Assembly (NCBI GenBank): GCA_907165135.1
Contig: OU015569.1
Location: 4,650,001 to 4,714,000, forward strand
Direction: 5' to 3'
Length of the DNA: 64,000 nucleotides
Source: Oikopleura dioica
Taxonomy: Eukaryota; Animalia; Chordata
Position numbers and translations under genes: made by a program. This document shows positions 37,251 through 48,646 of this stretch, piece after piece; position 1 is the first letter of the stretch, and each line of letters begins with the position of its first letter. The notes beneath the pieces were generated by a model. The model was not told the DNA's origin. It saw nothing but the letters and a program-made list of their open reading frames with translations, and ran no database searches.

Positions 37251-37996
37251 TGCTTGTTATTTCAATTTTGAATGAAGCCGACAGTAGGTTCAGTCGCGTT
37301 AGGCAGTAAGGTGGAATGTGAAGATTGAACTCATTTGAAAATTCTATACTTTGTTTAAAATATTTTATGCTGACGAATGGCGACGTGACTAGCGATTATA
37401 TAAGACCCTTGTGCTTTCTCTTGGAGAGACGGAGAACAACCCGTGGATCAGTTCGGTGGAGAGGTTAACGAGTGGGAACAAAAAACAGCCAGGTCTCGCT
37501 AAGATCTATAAATTATCTGATCTATTCGGTCATCCAAAGCGAAGGACGGAGCAATAAACAAAACGATAATTAATCCAGACCAGCTCAAAAAAGGGTGAAA
37601 TGTTTTGTTGCTCGTGCAATAATTCCCTTTTCTCTTGTGTAGTTTTACGCTGGAAAACATAATCGATTCTTAGCCCAAGAATCGTTAGGTTTTGAAAGCT
37701 AAAACAAATCAAAACGCTCATTCAGTTTTCAGATCTTCTTTTACTTGAGCAGTAAATGGAGCAGTAAAGGAAGGATACAAAGAGGGGTGAGCAGCGATAC
37801 TCATTATGTTTCAATAAATATAGGGCTACGCGCTATATAATAAAATGGAGAGCAGTCTCAACCGAGACGGATACAATGGTGATGGTGACATAATAAGAAA
37901 GTCTGACGTGAAGGAGATTTCGACGGACCTAATAATGGAGCAGCGAAACAAAACGAAGAGAAAGTAAAAATCCAACATTTTCTATCAGGGTCAGCA

Positions 37997-40900
37997 TTAT
38001 AGTTTCGAACGAAGGTACGCTTCGAGGTACTGGGATCGCGACAGGTACCCCGTGAGCTCGATAAATTCTTCGGTTGGCATTTTGAGCTTTTCCTCGACCT
38101 CGACCGGGTAGTTGTCCGTCGTGAAAGGAAGCTGAAAATAGATGTTGGAAGGCATAATTTGAAAGTCAGTAGCACCTTGAACTTATTTTGAGTTTGACGG
38201 GTGGGCTGGGGTTTGGGAGTGCTGGGCGCTCGCGTCGCCACCGGTTTCACCGATTTAGAAATAGCGGGCATTGTTCTTCGTCGGGTAGCACGGCCCTCAG
38301 TCTTCGGCTTTTCGGGTTTAATTTCCGTCTCCACTGTCTCCTCCTCGTTCTCTTCTTTGATCTCGTCGCTATTCTCCTCATCCAGTTCAGGAAGAAGAGG
38401 CTTTGGAGATTCAACTAATCCCGCCTCGAGCTTGATGACAGTGTTCGGGCTAATGTATTCCTTCTTTATTTGAGAAAGGTCAACCTCTTTCTTCAAGGCT
38501 GCAATCGCAGGGCTCTTCGAACGCGTAGAACGGGTCTCACTTTTCGGAGGTACTGGTGTCGGCAACTTTTCATCGGCGTCTTTTGAACTTTCTTCGGGAT
38601 TGGACTTTTGAGCGCGGCTGGCTCGGAGGGAAACTCGAGTGGCTCGGCTCGGAGTGGCTTTCTCAGGCGGCTCCTGTTTTACCACGACTTGGGCAGCCAA
38701 AGACAGACGGTCCTCCTTGGCGGTTTCCTCAGTCTGAGGCTGGCGACTTAGACGACGCTTGGGTCGAGTGTTAATCGAGGGTGCTGAAGCTGACTTCGTC
38801 GCTGCTCGTGGTGGGGCAGGCTCGACTCCGTCGCTCTCAGAATCAGAGCTTATAACTTCCTTGCTCTTTTTGCTTCGCTTGCTGAAAAAATACTGTTATT
38901 CGAAGTCGTGCGCGAGAGAAAGAAATTAAAGATGATTGAAAAAAGAAATTAAAGCTTTACGAACCTCGTTGACTCGGTTTGAGTGTCAAGATCCTTTTGC
39001 GGGTACTGCTTTTGCCCAGCCTTGACCTCGGACTCGTCCAGCTTCACATGCGAGAGGAACTTGAATGATTCCGGCACGAAATCCTCAATCTTGGGGGACG
39101 TCGTCTTCGGGGCTTCTCGTCGTGATGGCCGTCCCTTCGGTGTCTCTTGTCGTTTTGGGGTCGGTTTGTCTTCGACAGGTTGCGAAACACGACTGCGAGA
39201 GCGTTGTGGTCGAGAGGGCGTTTCTGAAGCACGATCTGGTGTCTTGTCCTTTCGGAAGCGTTTCGAACGCTCTTCAGATTGAGATGGTTTTGCGGGCTCC
39301 TGTTTGCGCTTCTTGAGCACACGGGACTTCACAGCGTTGCGGTCCTCGGGACCAGAAGAGTCATCAGAGTCTTTGGGAGGGATAATAGCTCTGGATCGAC
39401 GTGTTCTTGCTGTCGGGGTGTTCTCCTTATTAGGATCAGCTTTGGAAAGTTTCGGCGTAACTCGCTTCTCATTCTTTTTGTCTTCTGGCACGACAATCTC
39501 TTCTGCAATGGCTACTCGTGGATATGAAAAAATGATCAGAGGAATTATTTTCAATAAAATAATGCTTCTATTTTAGATATAGTAAAGAGGACGCATTTTC
39601 AAATCCGTTCCCATGAGGGCATCATCGTCGAGGTCACTTGCTTGAGGTGTGACTTGCGCTGCCATTGCTGATCTCAACAGATCTGGACTTTGAATTTCCG
39701 TGCCAGAAATGTAGTAGGACTTGTACGACTTTCCTTGTTGAATTCCCTCTTTGAGACTCGCGACGGTAGCATCGAGCATGCGAATCTTTAGCACTCCCAC
39801 TCCCTTGACAAAGTCGGCCACATCGTCATTGTTTTCGAAGGGACCGTAGAACTGTCTGTAGATGTAGTTGATCATCTTCTGAAGATGGGATGTGCCGAGC
39901 TTCGGGATGTGGACTTCATTGCTCATACATGACTCGCTCGCGACGTAGTCGGAAACAACTGCCAGAATGATCTTGTGAGCTTTCAATTGACCATCGGAGC
40001 ACACCAATGTCAAGTCTAGAATTTTGAGTTTAGGAAAGGAACTTTCCGACAAGTGGAGCTTACCGCAGGAAGGATCGTCATACATCTGTTTGTTAAGAAG
40101 CATACTCATGATACAGTTCTTCGCAGACTTGGTTTGCTTGTCCAAATACTCGTATATCATTGCTCGCGACTCAAAGTCCTGAATTTCGACGTTCGCGTCA
40201 TATCGAATTATTTAAATTTTACCCGGCTTAAAGTGATGTCTTCGCTGTCCCCTGCTAGATACTGTGTTTCGGCGTCTTTTGTGCTTCTCGTGGCTTGAAC
40301 TCCAGCGGCAACTTTGAAGGCTCGTTGGGAGAACTGGTGTCCAAAGTGAGCTTGTTTGGGCTTGCGGAGCTTTTTCTGGGTCGAGGCGTCTTTCTTTCCG
40401 ACGGGCTCGGTAAGGACAGCCATGTCGCGTGTGTACTGCGAGGTCTGAATAGCGCGCGTCGTGGTGATCACTCCAGTCGACGAAGTTTGTTGAGCACCGG
40501 CACCGGGGCGTTCGAGGATCGACGTTCGTCTGTTCGGCAATCCGTTAAGAATCTCGTTCAAGCCGCGGGACTTGTGAGCTGACAAGCTGGTGAATTGGGA
40601 GACGGGCGAAGAGATGCCAGAAGAAGGATGAGAGACGCGACCTGCGCTCGGTGCCTTTTTAAGTTTATTAGAAGAAGTTTTTTTCTTCTTCTCTTTAATC
40701 TTAGTAGGCGGAGGAGTGCTGATCACTAAGGCATTGTCGTCCGAGTCTGAAGCTTGCTTTTAGATTGACATTCGACAGTAAGAAAACAGTAATCTTAGGA
40801 GTGAATTGCGACTGACCTGAATCCTCTCGGGACTGGGCTCGCGAGGCCCGCTCGATCATCGACAATCGCTCATCAAGGGCAGTGGTTGATTTTGGTGCGT

Positions 40901-41980
40901 CTTCGGAAACAGTCGAAGGCGGTCGCGAACGCAAGTTGTTGGGCGAGGAGACCGACGATGGCGTTCGCGTCCTCGTCTGATCGGCGTTGTTGTTGGGCAG
41001 CAGGCCGGCACCAGATGCGCCGCCGTTCAACATTTCCTCGGCCTTTCTGGCGTCCTCGTCCGCGATCTGGCGATGGCGCGATCGTGAAGACCTGGTCTCG
41101 CTTTCTGTCTCACTAGAATTCGCGTTACCACTGGCGTCGCGAAGAGGAAATGGGGCTACCTGTGTGAAAATTCATCGCTGCTTTGCGAGTGTGGTGTGCG
41201 CGACGATCGTTCCGACTTGACTACACGAACCGGCCACTTTTTATCGATGTTTTTCACCTAAACTCTCGAGAAATGACCTCGGGAGTAGCTTAACCCACCG
41301 TACTGTCCAGCTCGTACAGAATTCTTGGTGGGAAAACGTCGTCCCACGTAGTCCTCAACTCGTAGAGCTTCTTGCGGTCCGGATCGGGTGAGCTACCACA
41401 AATCATATTTTTCTGATCGTTGAGTTTGTCTTATTACCTATGCCTGAACGTCTCCGCGAAGAGCTTCACCAAGTTGGTCGAGAAGTGGTGCACGTACTCG
41501 TCGGGGAAGTCCTTGATGATGTGGTCGATGAGGTAGAGCACGGGGATACGGTACTTGGGCGCCTCGCGCAGCCGCTGCTCGATCAAGTCCACGATCTATA
41601 AAAAAAACGGTGGAATGGCGCCCTAGAATAGCATCGCTCCAACCTGATCCGCATGTGCTCGATATTCGCCAGCCAAGATCGCCAAGGTCGTCAAGTGAGG
41701 TCGAGAATTGACACGCAGCTCGTTGAGCATGCCACCGAAGCCGCGGATGATCTAAAATACGAATAATTACTACTTCCAAGCGATGATATCGAAGAAAGAG
41801 CTTATCTATGCTTCGTTGGATGCGAAAGGTACATCTCGCAATCCTTTCGCAATTTTTTTTAGTAACTACGCGCTTATTTAAGAATCATCTGTTCCTTGAA
41901 TTTACATTATCAATGAAGGCTTGATCCGGGTTCGCTTCGATGACCTTCTCTTCCAGGGTGGGTCCATTTTCATTCGGCAT
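37997..41980 (-). CDS. Large protein with an N-terminal PCF11-type CTD-interacting domain (CID), a central BTB/POZ domain and S/T/P/K/R/E-rich disordered regions
   Basis: CID: MLNELRVNSRPHLTTLAILAGEY, IVDLIEQRL, PVLYLIDHIIKD, KLYELRTTWDDVFPPRILYELD, IDKKWP. BTB: YDDPSC-DLTLVCSDGQLKAHKIILAVVSDY...LQKMINYIY. The exons join in phase through GT-AG introns and end ...YLEAYLRSKL*. Confidence 0.8.
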
Positions 41981-42793
41981 TTTTCCCACGATTCATAAAA
42001 ACGTTTATTTCACTTGTCTGAACCCGTTCGATTTGGGTCAGAGTCGGAAATTTCTGAATTCAAAGAGTTTACAGATTATTCCTTCTTTTTTCGTCAAAGA
42101 ACAAAGGTTCAGCAAAGTTTTTAAAAAGGCAACAGACCGGAAATTTAGTCTACTTCTGTTATTAGGACTAGGACTGTTCGAATGCCCTTAGGGAACGAGA
42201 GAAGGAATGACTCCAAAAGTGGCTTGATGATTCATAGATTTCGAAAAATGACGTCACTTTTTCCTACCGGTTTAGAGTGCTTTAAAAAGTTAATTCTTTT
42301 TAGCCAGAAATAAAAATTCCAAAGACTAAATCCACCGAATAAAAGGCATTTTTCATTTATCTTTTCTCTTTATCATCCCCGTCAATCACGTGACCCTTTT
42401 GTAGGTTAACTGGGTTCATAAAAAGAAGGATGAAACTGTAGAATAGGGCGCTTTGCAATATTTCTCTCCGCCCACGCCTTTTTCTCTCAAGTTTTTTAAA
42501 TTCATTTTTTTTGCGATTTCAGTTTTCTCTGATTCGGATTGGTTCGTTCGTGTTTGTTTAGAGAGGGTCGAGTTCAGTTATTGTTTGATTGAAATTCGAT
42601 TATTATTTTTTTTTTTTTGTTGACTTTAGAATTTTTTTTTTGGGGTGGAGTATAATTTTTAGCGTTGGGTTGGGGCTATTGGGGCGAATCGAGAGAATCT
42701 TCGAGCAGGCCAGAGCGTTTTTCTTGGCAGTGACGAGCGAATGGCTTTGGCTGGTGGGAGCGCGCCGCCTACGCGCGCTGAATTGGAGCCCGG

Positions 42794-43600: not shown

Positions 43601-44340
43601 CTACAGTTCGTCTTTGACGCCAGCCGGCCAGTTCTCTTTGGGCACATACTTGGGCATCAGCTCCTTGACGCGCGAGACGAACTCGTCCTTTTCCAGGCAG
43701 TTTTTGCACACTTCGCCCCAAGTCGTCAGAATCTTCTTCAACTCTTTCACCTGATCAAATCGTCAAACACCGATCATTGGGCAAGTCTGGTTACCTTGAT
43801 CTTTTGCCAGTTGATGGCGCTGTAATCGTATGGCTTCGGGTATTTGAGATCGCAGATTTGAGCGTCCTTCTTTTTCAGCGTCGCGCAGATTTTTTGAACC
43901 GGCTTTTTGAACGACATTGGATCCACGATTGACTGAAATTAACATGACTACGATTGTCTACAGACGTTTATAAGTTGGGGAACCGCTTTATTCAAGCACT
44001 TTAAGGCCCTGACTCAGGTTTTGGAGACAGGTTACTTCGCCCAGAGAAGCTGCTCCTCGATAAAAAAAATAATGCGCTAAAAGGCAGCACTCTTCTAAAA
44101 AGTATTAACCTTGTGCATGGTGGTTGCAGCGTCTGGCGTGAGTCCCGTGTAATAGCAGAATCTGTTGTCCTGCTCTTTGGCTTCCTTGCACATGGCTCGG
44201 AGCTTCTTCTCGATTTCGCCCTTGTCACTGATGTTCTCGTCGGTGAGCACCTTCTCGACCTTGCCGAGGAAAGTCTCGCAGACTTCGCACTCGCCAGAAG
44301 CCGCCGCCAAAGTCGCCAGGCCGAAGAAGAACAATTTCAT
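43601..44340 (-). CDS. MANF: MANF/CDNF (ARMET) ER-stress neurotrophic factor
   Basis: Signal peptide, [61 protein letters not shown]-terminal KDEL*. Three exons. Confidence 0.96.
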
Positions 44341-44705
44341 TTTCTGAAAAAGGAAAGAAGTGAAATCAACGAAGAGTAACGTAAAATAATAGAGTTTCTT
44401 GTTTCAATCAATTGCTATCAAAAAAATAATACATGTAGATTGTTCTATAGAAAGTGAAGACTGGGCCCGGCGATCTGTGTAGAAAACCTGAGTCAGGGTC
44501 TTTCGACAAATAACCAATTTGATTTTTTTATTAGATTTCTTTACTGACCCTGACTCAGGTCTTATACACTGGTTGAGGAGCCCAGATTGAAGGGATTTCA
44601 GTGGTCAAGAAAAAATAACATGAAAAAATGGAAATGTATACGATTCTGCGTTTTAGCACTTTTTGTCACAGGTGGATGCGTCTTCTTTGATTCTTGAGTG
44701 ACAAA

Positions 44706-46474: not shown

Positions 46475-47574
46475 ATGCTATCTCGCGCCTTCTGCTTCAC
46501 TCGGAATCGGGCGTTCTCGGTGCTCAAAGGAAACCGGGACAGATTTGGCGGCGTCAATGTTTATTCCTACGAGAATACAAGTTCCATGGACGATTTCCCC
46601 GAGACGCTGCAGAACTCGCTGGAGGAATGGAAACAGACGGGCGTCAGGGGAGCCTGGTTCCATGTTTCGGGAGCGCAGACTACTTGGGTAAGTGTGCTTC
46701 GTTTTGAGTTGTCTAATTTGTTAAGATTTCGCATCTGATTTCGGCCGGGTTCGAGTTCCATCACGCAAAGAACGACACTGCCGTATTGACCCGTTGGCTG
46801 CCCGAAGACGAGAGTTCTGGAATCCCCGAGTACCCGCACACCTACCTCGGCGTCGGGACGATCACCATCAACGCGAAAAACGAAATCCTTGTAATCAAGG
46901 AGAAAGTGCGCTTTTACAACAATTGGAAATTCCCCGGAGGATACGTCGACCGCGGAGAGAACATTCTTGACGCAGCCGTTCGAGAGGTTAAAGAAGAGAC
47001 TGGGGTGCAGACTGAAGCCCTCGGCTTGGTTGGATTTCGGCACGTTCTTCCACAGAAAGACATTCCCTTTCCTCCCTTCAAGTGTGCAGGTAGTCACATT
47101 TTCATAATCACTTTTCGGAATTTAAAGATAAATTAAATAATTTTATTTTGCGAAGCCACTTCGCGGCTATTTATTGAAGATCCTTCAGACCCTGACTGAA
47201 TCAGGCTGACACAGGTTTTCTACCCAGGCTCTCGAGTCACGATGTCCATATCTAGCAAGATTAAAAATAGATGGAAAAATTTTGGACAATTGACAAGTTT
47301 AAATTTAGACATTTACGCGATTTGCGCCCTGCGCCCCACGGGGGACGAAACGATTGTTCGCCAAGAGCGCGAAGTTTCCGAGGCCGAGTGGCTCCCCGTC
47401 GACGAGTTTCTGGAAAAAGGCTCTTTGCATAATACGCACTTCTTGAATGCGTATTTGAAAGCGAAGGATCAAAATGTTATAATCTCGCCGCACGACTTTT
47501 CGATGAAATATGGAAATGCAGATAGACACATGCTTATGTACTTTAATGATATTCTTGATTCGAGTTCCGATTGA
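46475..47574 (+). CDS. NUDT6: Nudix hydrolase, NUDT6-like
   Basis: Nudix box WKFPGGYVDRGENILDAAVREVKEETGV. NUDT6-type N-terminus DRFGGV, W...G.RG.W, AGFEFHHAK, LTRWLP, P.YPHTYLGVG. TTTCAG directly precedes AAATG. Confidence 0.92.
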
Positions 47575-47828: not shown

Positions 47829-48646
47829 TTATTCGAGTTCGGCGAGTTTTCTTTCGAACTCTTGGATTTTTTCGTCGCAGTTGGTCAAATTTCGCGAAGG
47901 CTCCCAAGTAGCTGACTTGCGTGGCCAGTACTTCCAGATGACTTTGTATTGGAAGCCTCGTCCCCAGCGACGCTTGTCGATGATTTCATCCACTTCCCAT
48001 TCGGTCATATCGACCGGCGGTTTGACAGGTTCCTCGTCGGATTGCTCGTCTTCTTCTGTGTAGTCGAACTCGGGCGAGATCTTTGCCGATCGCTTCCTTT
48101 TCGGCGAGCTGCGATTCGAGGAATTAGAGGAAGAGTACTCAAACTCCTTGGTAGTGTCTTCAGAAATCTTCTTCTGTTCTACGACCGGTTGATTTTCGGG
48201 AAAGTCTTGAAGCTCTTCTTCGTCGGACGGGTACTCCCGGAGAGATGCCTCGTATCGGACTACTTCTCCAAGGTTTTGAATCTCATCCAGCGCCCAGTAA
48301 CGAGTCTTGTTACCTTGCTCCATCTAAAATAAAAATGTTAGGGCGATATTTTGACACCATTAAAAATATCAAACCCTTAGATCTACTAAGACACTCTCGA
48401 AATTGAGGAAAGCTAGGCTTGGCAACCTATGTAGAAAACCAGAGCCAGGGTTCTGAAAGAGCTATAATGAAAAGCGGCATGTTGAAAAACCTTATCTGTA
48501 TGATAATCGATTACGTGAATCATCTTTATAGATTTTTCTTGCGAGCTAACCTTGTAGTGGACCATGTTGTTGATGATCTTCCTGTCTGAAATCGTTGTCA
48601 TGAAGTCGGTTCTTTTCAGATTTCCCCGTTTCACTACTTTGTTCAT
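47829..48646 (-). CDS. Chromodomain protein (intact C-terminal chromodomain plus a degenerate N-terminal one)
   Basis: WEVDEIIDKRRWGRGFQYKVIWKYWPRKSATWEPSRNLTNC. The upstream exon MNKVV...ISDRKIINNMVHYK joins in phase 0 to MEQGNKTRYW. Confidence 0.8.

What the first reader, a model, noticed from the sequence alone, without database searches (positions are those of the whole stretch)
37997..41980. Apparent CID-BTB fusion protein: a candidate RNA Pol II-directed CUL3 adaptor
Seen: a complete PCF11-like CID is linked by in-phase introns to a BTB domain, and no PCF11 C-terminal zinc fingers are present. The CTD-binding DSI..N motif reads DHI..D. The weakest link is intron 41160-41224, but the downstream frame has a stop four codons before the acceptor and about 40 open codons before its first ATG, which favours splicing. 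Established: CIDs bind the phosphorylated Pol II CTD; BTB domains dimerise and often recruit CUL3; CUL3-ARMC5 ubiquitylates RPB1. I know no CID+BTB protein. Inference: a lineage-specific link between CTD recognition and ubiquitylation or chromatin repression.
Basis: partly seen in the sequence, partly recalled or inferred. Interest (0 to 1): 0.75.

Follow-up and report, generated by a model that had tools for sequence, protein, structure and literature searches.

The report
Larvacean-specific PCF11-CID–BTB fusion gene
This is a real, expressed gene of the planktonic tunicate Oikopleura dioica that joins the RNA polymerase II tail-binding domain of the termination factor PCF11 to a BTB dimerisation domain; the combination is found only in larvaceans, sits unnamed in public databases and has never been studied.

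Summary
On the minus strand, 41980-37997, twelve exons encode a 1086-aa protein. It is identical to the public model OKI2018_I69.XSR.g14592 (Oikopleura dioica, Okinawa). It has a full PCF11-type CID, a 300-aa disordered linker, a BTB domain, a 450-aa K/R/S/P-rich tail and a small C-terminal three-helix module. No PCF11 zinc fingers or other Pfam domains are present.

The doubted CID-to-linker junction is spliced as predicted in 13-33 RNA reads of a sister lineage, but the intron is 41159-41113, not 41160-41224. Two intron-less mRNA contigs of sister lineages start with the Oikopleura spliced leader. Each carries one ORF from CID through BTB to the tail. The BTB-to-tail intron (39610-39512) is a non-canonical GA-AG intron.

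At least four more distant larvacean sequences share the architecture, and one 7-kb genomic contig shows the parts in the same order. Outside larvaceans the nearest relative is canonical PCF11, similar in the CID only.

The BTB is closest to transcription-factor BTBs (ZBTB17, Kaiso, BACH1, NAC1). It resembles CUL3 adaptors less and has no BACK/3-box. The CUL3 idea is therefore unsupported, though not excluded. My best reading is a dimeric Pol II CTD reader. No paper describes it.

The parts
37997..41980 (-). Whole coding region: 12 exons, 1086 codons plus stop. Equals public model Oidioi.mRNA.OKI2018_I69.XSR.g14592.t1 (P0007).
   Evidence: Every exon translation is found consecutively in P0007. 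Name and Pfam BTB+CID.
41981..42053 (-). Inferred 5' UTR. The spliced-leader acceptor AG is at 42055-42054 (gaattcag|aaatttccg).
   Evidence: By homology only. L005 and L006 mRNA contigs carry the spliced leader (..TTTTTGAGTCCGATTTCGATTGTCTAACAG) joined to sequence that aligns to window 42041-41961.
41160..41751 (-). PCF11-type CID, exons E2-E5 (41751-41644, 41595-41438, 41392-41299, 41257-41160); protein residues about 26-177.
   Evidence: Pfam CID. Best solved match is yeast Pcf11 CID. Introns 1 and 2 are confirmed by same-lineage RNA contigs. The E3/E4 and E4/E5 joints are seen in 58 and 31 sister-lineage reads.
41509..41526 (-). CTD-groove motif D85-H86-I87-I88-K89-D90, equivalent to yeast Pcf11 D68-S69-I70-C71-K72-N73.
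   Evidence: Alignments. D, I and K are invariant in the family; S is kept in non-dioica larvaceans. The pcf11-13 allele is D68A S69A I70A (PMC8263057).
41113..41159 (-). TAG at 41158-41156 follows the donor.
   Evidence: 13 joint reads plus 20 loose-end reads of sister-lineage run X14 read ..GACGAGTTCTCGCATAG|TGAGACGGATAG, that is ..DEFSH-S-ETD... The same joint is in L005/L006. L004 retains this intron.
40223..41112 (-). Disordered Ser/Arg/Pro-rich linker, exons E6 (41112-40817) and E7 (40746-40223). Conserved islands: SDEFS, SRPPS, LDERxS.
   Evidence: Family alignment invariants. The E6/E7 joint is in sister-lineage cDNA. The E7/E8 joint is supported by a 12-nt overhang of a same-lineage RNA contig that equals the end of E7.
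40331..40462 (-). Most conserved linker block, TTRAIQT..(20 aa)..D-STQKKLRKPKQ-HFG-QF (residues 372-415). It holds a candidate LC8-type anchor (R-A-I-Q-T) and a basic NLS-like run.
   Evidence: Invariant columns. Sister-lineage reads map here at 90% or more. LC8 position preferences are from PMC6607443. Binding is inference only.
39740..40178 (-). BTB/POZ domain with N-terminal extension, exons E8 (40178-40064) and E9 (40015-39611). Intron 8 (40063-40016) is in frame but is spliced out.
   Evidence: Pfam BTB. Intron 8 joint is in a same-lineage RNA contig. AF2 model. Foldseek hits are all BTB domains. Profile against PDB.
39512..39610 (-). Intron 9, non-canonical GA..AG (99 nt). It contains the in-frame TAA at 39575-39573, which would end a CID-BTB-only protein if the intron were retained.
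   Evidence: cDNA L005/L006 read ..CTCATGG|CTCTGGCGAAGGAA.., whereas sister genomic L001 reads ..CTCATGG|GAAC. P0007 reads DDDALM-AIAEEIVVP. A same-lineage RNA contig, 39380-39607, is unspliced here.
38176..39511 (-). K/R/S/P/E-rich tail, exons E10 (39511-38965) and E11 (38881-38176). It has PKKRK-like basic clusters and only one in-frame Met, near the end of E11 (TMPAIS).
   Evidence: Open frames and phases. Intron 10 joint is in a same-lineage RNA contig. The tail is contiguous with the BTB in L005/L006 ORFs.
37997..38131 (-). Exon E12: a conserved C-terminal module of about 35 aa forming three helices, then the stop.
   Evidence: Alignment A4. AF2 pLDDT 83-94 over the helices. No significant fold match: Foldseek none, VIA Z at most 3.0.

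Best explanation
Shown: this is a single, expressed protein-coding gene found only in larvaceans. Its product begins with a CID of PCF11 descent. The CID keeps the Tyr/Asp/Ile/Lys groove residues, and in O. dioica it has His in place of the Ser of DSI. After the CID all PCF11 cleavage-factor parts are missing. In their place come a long disordered linker with a few invariant short motifs, a transcription-factor-type BTB domain, a basic low-complexity tail with NLS-like clusters, and a small three-helix end module.

Inferred mechanism: the protein is nuclear and dimerises through the BTB. It therefore presents two CIDs to the repeated, phosphorylated CTD of elongating or terminating Pol II. That is the same logic as the dimeric CID proteins RPRD1A/B and Rtt103. 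It would use its conserved linear motifs, BTB surface and C-terminal module to bring still unknown partners to the polymerase. The candidate LC8 anchor next to the BTB would reinforce dimerisation.

It is most likely a paralogue of PCF11 that shed the 3'-processing function, not the cleavage factor itself.
For: One cistron:
- The exon model equals public protein P0007.
- Same-lineage RNA contigs confirm introns 1, 2, 8 and 10 and the E7/E8 joint.
- Sister-lineage reads join E3/E4, E4/E5 and E5/E6.
- L005 and L006 are intron-less, start with the spliced leader and hold one ORF of 1067/1092 aa with Pfam CID+BTB.

Conservation:
- P0008-P0012 all carry CID+BTB.
- The 7.2-kb genomic contig L007 of a distant species has the CID exons, linker motifs and BTB in the same order.
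- The family alignment shows invariant Y82, D85, I87 and K89 in the groove helix.

PCF11 descent.

BTB:
- Fold and type.
- It is so diverged that an exhaustive HMMER search of 1.84 billion representatives gave only 12 hits, the best three from this family and the rest short fragments or weak multi-stretch matches.

Dimeric-reader analogy: from established knowledge of the RPRD1A/B and Rtt103 architectures (CID plus dimerisation domain).

LC8-like anchor: T-T-R-x-[IV]-Q-T is invariant and fits the published position preferences (PMC6607443).
Against: - No binding, localisation or dimerisation was or could be tested here.
- The BTB model has only moderate confidence (mean pLDDT 65).
- The Ser-to-His and Asn-to-Asp/Glu changes lie in the helix whose D68A/S69A/I70A triple mutant disables yeast Pcf11 CID function, so CTD binding could be altered in O. 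dioica.
- Whether a canonical PCF11 exists elsewhere in this genome was not established. The CID search returned none from Oikopleura, but that search is insensitive.
- A same-lineage RNA contig is unspliced across intron 9, and L004 retains intron 5. Shorter CID-BTB or CID-only products may therefore also exist.
Confidence: 0.6

Rival explanations
1. Pol II-directed CUL3 substrate adaptor. The BTB recruits CUL3-RBX1 and the CID aims the ligase at CTD-phosphorylated RPB1, doing in one chain what ARMC5-CUL3 does.
For: A BTB fold is present. KEAP1, KLHL3 and KBTBD2 BTBs are among the structural matches, with TM by target 0.4-0.6. Met520 and Glu523 are invariant in the loop before strand B3, roughly where CUL3 adaptors carry phi-x-E. 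Some ZBTB-type BTBs are reported to bind CUL3 (my own knowledge).
Against: Sequence and fold rank transcription-factor BTBs first; KLHL3 scores 1.5e-4 and SPOP 0.5. No BACK/3-box is found by Pfam, and the model shows a beta-hairpin then disorder after helix A5. The M-x-x-E spacing differs from phi-x-E, and the alternative register puts Ala or Gln at phi.
Confidence: 0.15
2. PCF11 decoy or anti-terminator. A PCF11 CID without cleavage-factor modules competes with canonical PCF11 for Ser2P-CTD and delays termination. That could be useful in a genome full of operons and very short intergenic gaps. It would work like SCAF4/SCAF8.
For: The CID is PCF11-type with the groove residues kept, and all other PCF11 parts are absent. 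The gene is conserved across larvaceans, which use spliced-leader trans-splicing. SCAF4/8 anti-termination is my own knowledge.
Against: Purely architectural reasoning. It does not explain why a BTB, an invariant linker block and a C-terminal module are conserved. No expression or phenotype data.
Confidence: 0.15
3. The remodelled sole PCF11 orthologue. Larvaceans lost canonical PCF11, and this protein serves in 3' end formation through new partners.
For: The CID-region search (candidates 600-1900 aa) returned no second Oikopleura CID protein. The only non-family hit was a mite PCF11.
Against: That search needs shared exact 5-mers and is very insensitive: 188 candidates in 5.8 billion. No CLP1-binding region or zinc fingers remain, and these are what make PCF11 a cleavage factor.
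Confidence: 0.1
4. Two products rather than one: a CID-only protein ending at the TAG after exon 5, and a separately trans-spliced BTB mRNA. The full-length ORF would then be a minor or artefactual form.
For: L004 is a transcript contig that retains intron 5 only, which puts TAG right after ..SDEFSHR. P0003, a transcript-derived fragment of a distant larvacean, has the spliced leader joined directly to the exon that starts the conserved linker block.
Against: In run X14, 33 reads show the spliced E5/E6 form and none was listed with the intron. L005/L006 are complete spliced-leader-to-3'UTR molecules with one ORF. P0003 has no Met in the 115 aa after the leader although the block is conserved as protein. 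Its species (L007) has the CID exons upstream on the same strand. E6 of L002 and E10 have no in-frame start, and E11 has only one Met near its end.
Confidence: 0.05

Closest known systems
PCF11 (cleavage factor IIm / yeast CF IA subunit)
   Same: The N-terminal CID is of this type. Best solved match is yeast Pcf11 CID, E 6.5e-13. A mite PCF11 is 38% identical over 184 aa, including the LRTTWDDVF..LD..V..D..WPV segment just past the Pfam domain.
   Different: Nothing after residue about 180 is similar. There are no zinc fingers, no CLP1- or CstF-binding regions; a BTB, other conserved motifs and a three-helix end module stand there instead. DSI reads DHI in O. dioica.
RPRD1A/RPRD1B and yeast Rtt103 (CID plus dimerisation domain)
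   Same: The same design logic: an N-terminal CID followed by a domain that makes dimers, giving two CTD-binding sites per particle. This is a functional analogy from established knowledge.
   Different: Their CIDs are of another subtype (RPRD1A only E 1.6e-4). They dimerise by a coiled coil, not a BTB, and they lack the long linker and tail.
SCAF4/SCAF8 (SR-related CTD-associated factors)
   Same: CID followed by long Ser/Arg-rich low-complexity sequence. They compete with the termination machinery on the CTD.
   Different: They carry an RRM and no BTB. Their CID match is weaker (E about 3e-4).
Transcription-factor BTB/POZ domains (ZBTB17/MIZ1, ZBTB33/Kaiso, BACH1, NAC1, myoneurin, PLZF)
   Same: Long-form BTB with an N-terminal extension. 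These are the best profile and fold matches.
   Different: Those proteins pair the BTB, at the N-terminus, with zinc fingers, bZIP or BEN DNA-binding domains. Here the BTB is central and the targeting module is a Pol II CTD reader. Sequence identity is only 15-20%.
ARMC5-CUL3 and other CUL3-BTB ligases acting on RPB1
   Different: ARMC5 recognises Pol II through ARM repeats, and its BTB has CUL3-binding features. Here no 3-box/BACK is detectable and CUL3-adaptor BTBs are the weaker matches.

Membership tests
CID domain (Pfam PF04818) | Match to the family profile above the curated cut-off over most of its length | tested here: met
   P0007: 49.0 bits against a cut-off of 23.9, profile positions 7-117 of 120. 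A single exon already scores 29.2 bits.
PCF11 | CID of the PCF11 subtype | tested here: met
   Yeast Pcf11 CID E 6.5e-13 against 1.6e-4 (RPRD1A) to 7e-4 (SCAF4) for the other CID subtypes. Mite PCF11 38% identical, E 3e-29.
PCF11 | CTD-groove motif D68-S69-I70 (its mutation gives pcf11-13) | tested here: inconclusive
   D and I are kept. S is H in O. dioica but S in other larvaceans; N73 is D or E. The allele definition is from PMC8263057. The effect of His is unknown.
PCF11 | C-terminal zinc fingers and CLP1/CstF-binding regions | tested here: not met
   Pfam finds only CID and BTB. BLASTP against a 1539-aa PCF11 finds nothing beyond the CID. No Cys/His clusters in the sequence.
BTB/POZ domain (Pfam PF00651) | Profile match above cut-off and a BTB fold | tested here: met
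   30.7-35.3 bits against a cut-off of 20.5 in P0007 and orthologues. 49 of the top 50 Foldseek matches are BTB domains, TM by target up to 0.70, though E is only 0.03. Profile against PDB down to 3e-11.
CUL3 substrate adaptors (BTB-BACK-Kelch, SPOP/MATH-BTB and similar) | 3-box/BACK helices after the BTB | tested here: not met
   No BACK hit. The model shows a beta-hairpin and disorder after helix A5.
CUL3 substrate adaptors | phi-x-E motif in the loop before strand B3 | tested here: inconclusive
   Invariant E517, M520 and E523 give M-x-x-E or [A/Q]-x-E depending on register. No residue-level structural superposition was available.
CUL3 substrate adaptors | Physical binding to CUL3 | not testable with these tools
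   Needs a pull-down or a co-fold with O. dioica CUL3.
LC8 (DYNLL) clients | Eight-residue motif in a disordered region, anchored by TQT or a close variant, with a favourable -4, a positive -3 and no charge at +1 | tested here: inconclusive
   T-T-R-A-I-Q-T-S fits (-4 T, -3 R, -1 I, 0 Q, +1 T) and is invariant. The second Q site, STQKK, has Lys at +1, which is unfavourable. No predictor or binding test was run.

The most novel reading that the evidence does not exclude
Larvaceans evolved a dedicated Pol II CTD-docked regulator by grafting the PCF11 CID onto a BTB scaffold. It would act either as an anti-terminator or decoy that keeps Pol II going across the internal poly(A) sites of their many operons, or as a CTD-guided CUL3 ligase adaptor that removes stalled Pol II. 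Either would be a new class of CTD effector.
Probability: 0.2. Interest if true: 0.8.

Novelty: new variant of a known kind. Interest (0 to 1): 0.5.

Why it matters
CID proteins are the main readers of the Pol II CTD code. Each known family couples the CID to a different effector: cleavage factor, RRM, or a coiled coil that scaffolds a phosphatase. A CID coupled to a BTB has not been described. This one is conserved across larvacean species, so it is under selection and is not an annotation accident.

Larvaceans have extremely compact genomes, operons and spliced-leader trans-splicing, so termination control is a live problem for them. O. dioica can be cultured and knocked down, so the function is testable.

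The gene also adds to hints from this scan that BTB domains were fused to unusual nucleic-acid or polymerase-binding modules in this genome. Those notes are unchecked. The practical limit is that everything beyond the architecture is inference.

Tried and rejected
- My first model used a GT donor at 39592 and an acceptor at 39503 for the BTB-to-tail intron. cDNA of sister lineages and P0007 show the GA-AG intron 39610-39512 instead.
- Raw RNA runs X13, X14 and X10 turned out to be from a different O. dioica lineage (90-95% identity). They cover only the most conserved exons and give orthologue joints, not expression of this allele.
- phmmer of the BTB exon against PDB gave nothing; the family profile was needed.
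- NCBIfam gave nothing.
- ESM Atlas feature search gave no usable hit.
- Fold searches of the C-terminal three-helix module gave no match: Foldseek none, VIA Z at most 3.0, with ENY2 and the TFIIH p62 BSD domain among the noise-level rows.
- The weak Pfam hints DUF5743 and REST_helical after the BTB are below cut-off and were dropped.
- Literature searches for CID plus BTB, Oikopleura plus PCF11 and Oikopleura plus BTB found no description.
- I considered that P0003's spliced leader means a separate BTB gene, and rejected it as the main form (see rivals).
- I ran no further search on finding a canonical PCF11, because a blank would have been uninformative.
- I built and sent no joined exon sequence. 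The identical database protein P0007 was used by id.
Full report
ORGANISM AND LOCUS

I confirmed this independently. A protein search returned 'Oidioi.mRNA.OKI2018_I69.XSR.g14592.t1.cds [Oikopleura dioica]' (P0007, 1086 aa). Every exon of my model translates to a consecutive piece of that protein.

GENE MODEL (minus strand)

- E1 41980-41906
- E2 41751-41644
- E3 41595-41438
- E4 41392-41299
- E5 41257-41160
- E6 41112-40817
- E7 40746-40223
- E8 40178-40064
- E9 40015-39611
- E10 39511-38965
- E11 38881-38176
- E12 38131-37997

This gives 3261 nt, that is 1086 codons plus stop. Introns are 41-154 nt, as is usual for this species. Ten are GT-AG.

Intron 9 (39610-39512) is GA-AG. The cDNA contigs of sister lineages read ..CTCATGG|CTCTGGCGAAGGAAATCGTC... 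The matching genomic contig L001 reads ..CTCATGG|GAAC... In the window the same cut gives L-M-A-I-A-E-E-I-V-V-P, exactly as in P0007. My first guess, a GT donor at 39592, was wrong.

Pfam CID is above its cut-off on exon 3 alone. It covers positions 7-117 of 120 on the whole protein. Pfam BTB is above its cut-off. Nothing else is found in 1086 residues, so the PCF11 zinc fingers are absent.

The groove helix reads P-V-L-Y-L-I-D-H-I-I-K-D. It aligns to yeast Pcf11 A-F-Y-A-L-D68-S69-I70-C-K-N73. The pcf11-13 allele is D68A S69A I70A in the CID and is termination-defective (PMC8263057).

The true intron 5 is 41159-41113. The TAG at 41158-41156 does follow the donor.

CID AND BTB ARE ON ONE MESSENGER

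Same lineage. Run X1 is a marine metatranscriptome whose contigs are at least 99% identical to the window. Its contigs:
- confirm introns 1, 2, 8 and 10;
- include one contig ending at 40179 with a 12-letter overhang that equals the last bases of E7, so E7 is joined to E8.

Sister lineage. The raw RNA runs labelled with the species name are 90-95% identical, so they belong to another O. dioica lineage. In X14:
- 58 reads join E3 to E4;
- 31 reads join E4 to E5;
- 13 joint reads plus 20 loose-end reads join E5 to E6, as ..TCGCATAG|TGAGACGGATAG, which reads ..DEFSH-S-ETD.. and is exactly the predicted phase-2 joint.

mRNA contigs. A pattern scan of JGI metagenome contigs with the conserved linker block found L005 (3639 nt) and L006 (4143 nt).
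- Both lack all eleven introns.
- Both begin with the larvacean spliced leader: L006 starts TTTTTGAGTCCGATTTCGATTGTCTAACAG, followed by a 5' UTR of about 70 nt and the ATG.
- Each holds one ORF of 1067 or 1092 aa with Pfam CID and BTB.
- The E6/E7 joint is seen in them and in L004.

No internal start codons. In the close relative L002 the only early Met of E6 is Val. E10 has no in-frame Met at all and E11 has a single one near its end, so neither offers a plausible start for a separate protein. These exons cannot start proteins of their own.

CAVEATS ON ISOFORMS

- A same-lineage RNA contig (39380-39607) runs unspliced across intron 9. That intron holds an in-frame TAA at 39575-39573.
- L004 is a transcript contig that retains intron 5 while introns 6-11 are removed.
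- P0003 is a transcript-derived fragment of a distant larvacean. It starts with a template-switch tail and the spliced leader, joined straight to the exon that opens the conserved linker block. It has no Met in the next 115 residues. Its species has the CID exons upstream on the same strand (L007). I therefore read it as internal trans-splicing, not a separate gene.

Shorter CID-only, CID-BTB-only or CID-less products may thus exist as minor forms.

HOW WIDE THE FAMILY IS

The CID-region search found eight family proteins, all with precomputed Pfam BTB+CID:
- three O. dioica lineages (P0005/P0006, P0007 and P0008; P0008 is named by UniRef 'CID domain-containing protein');
- four proteins 62-67% identical in the CID (P0009-P0012).

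Genomic contig L008 carries linker block, BTB, tail and C-terminal module. The 7.2-kb AT-rich contig L007 carries CID exons, Ser-rich exons, linker block and BTB in order on one strand, with long introns.

The only non-family hit was a canonical PCF11 of a mite. It is similar in the first 184 residues only (38% identical, E 3e-29).

An exhaustive HMMER search of 1.84 billion representative proteins with the BTB ORF gave just 12 hits under E 0.001. The best three are family members. The rest are short fragments or weak multi-stretch matches that I did not characterise. The BTB is very diverged, and the architecture looks confined to larvaceans. I could not run a formal architecture query.

WHAT THE PARTS LOOK LIKE

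CID. PCF11 subtype: Pcf11 E 6.5e-13, RPRD1A 1.6e-4, SCAF8 3e-4. Y82, D85, I87 and K89 are invariant. Ser86 is kept in all non-dioica members, and His is specific to O. dioica.

Linker. Disordered, with invariant islands: SDEFS just after the CID, SRPPS, LDERxS, and a 44-residue block T-T-R-x-[IV]-Q-T ... D-x-S-T-Q-K-K-L-R-x-P-K-Q-x-x-F-x-x-Q-F.
- The first island of that block fits the published preferences for LC8 clients: H-bonding residue at -4, positive at -3, mid-sized at -1, Gln at 0, Thr at +1 (PMC6607443).
- The second does not, because Lys sits at +1. It looks more like a nuclear localisation signal.

BTB. The AF2 model made with the seven-row family alignment has the canonical strand/helix order at moderate confidence (mean pLDDT 65).
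- 49 of the top 50 Foldseek matches are BTB domains, led by myoneurin, PATZ1, MIZ1 and PLZF. KEAP1 and KLHL follow.
- The family profile against PDB ranks ZBTB17/NAC1 (3e-11), Kaiso (1e-7) and BACH1 (2e-6) above KLHL3 (1.5e-4) and SPOP (0.5).
- No BACK/3-box is found.

C-terminus. The last 35 residues fold with confidence into three helices (pLDDT 83-94). They have no significant structural match.

MECHANISM

Shown: a conserved, expressed protein with a PCF11-type CID, a transcription-factor-type BTB, and none of the PCF11 cleavage-factor parts.

Inferred: it is nuclear, dimerises through the BTB (perhaps helped by LC8), and docks two CIDs on the phosphorylated CTD repeats. It thereby brings partners bound to its motifs, BTB surface or end module to Pol II. 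This is the design of RPRD1A/B and Rtt103 with a different dimeriser.

Rival readings:
- The CUL3-adaptor reading is possible but is the weaker fit to the BTB type.
- A decoy or anti-terminator role is attractive for an operon-rich genome, but it is pure inference.
- Whether a canonical PCF11 also exists in O. dioica was not settled.

NOVELTY

The protein is in public databases with both domains flagged, but it is unnamed. I found no paper on it. It is a new variant among CID proteins, not a new kind of system.

RULES FOLLOWED

Exons were searched by reference, and the identical database protein was used by id.

Noticed in passing
P0003 (transcript-derived, distant larvacean); homologous exon at L007:4253-4504; window equivalent about 40480: A transcript fragment begins with a template-switch tail and the larvacean spliced leader (translated MG-THPIFESDFDCLT). 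The leader is joined directly to the exon that opens the conserved linker block. This looks like internal spliced-leader trans-splicing at a cis acceptor, giving a CID-less mRNA with no in-frame Met for 115 codons.
   Followed up: partly
L004:51-96; window intron 5, 41159-41113: A sister-lineage transcript contig retains intron 5 while introns 6-11 are spliced out. A TAG directly after the donor (AG|GTAG) is present in the window, L002 and L004, so retention would give a CID-only protein of about 178 aa.
   Followed up: partly
window 41392-41299 (exon 4): Exon 4 (SPDPDRKKLYELRTTWDDVFPP.ILYELDST) is 95-98% identical at the nucleotide level to sister-lineage cDNA, whereas the rest of the gene is 62-77%. 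Synonymous sites seem constrained.
   Followed up: partly
window 37706-37952 (3' UTR): The 3' UTR is 76-77% identical to sister-lineage cDNA over about 250 nt, more than much of the coding sequence. Sister-lineage reads map at 90% or more to 37721-37833.
   Followed up: no
L002:2690-2830: In the 90%-identical relative, the intron after the BTB exon carries a run of GCTAGGCTAGGCAG-like repeats that the window lacks.
   Followed up: no
window 44098-44403 (-): Exon of a MANF/ARMET homologue (Pfam ARMET_N, E 8e-17).
   Followed up: partly
window 47832-48323 (-): ORF with an acidic Ser-rich region and a C-terminal chromodomain (Pfam Chromo, E 2e-13).
   Followed up: partly
window 46717-47133 (+): NUDIX hydrolase exon (Pfam NUDIX, E 1e-18), with a likely continuation at 47200-47571.
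   Followed up: partly
same genome, other windows (notes s1-393192, s1-406192): The scan's unchecked notes list BTB fused to an HMG box and BTB fused to three dsRNA-binding motifs elsewhere in this genome. Together with CID-BTB this hints at repeated BTB fusions to unusual targeting modules in O. dioica.
   Followed up: no
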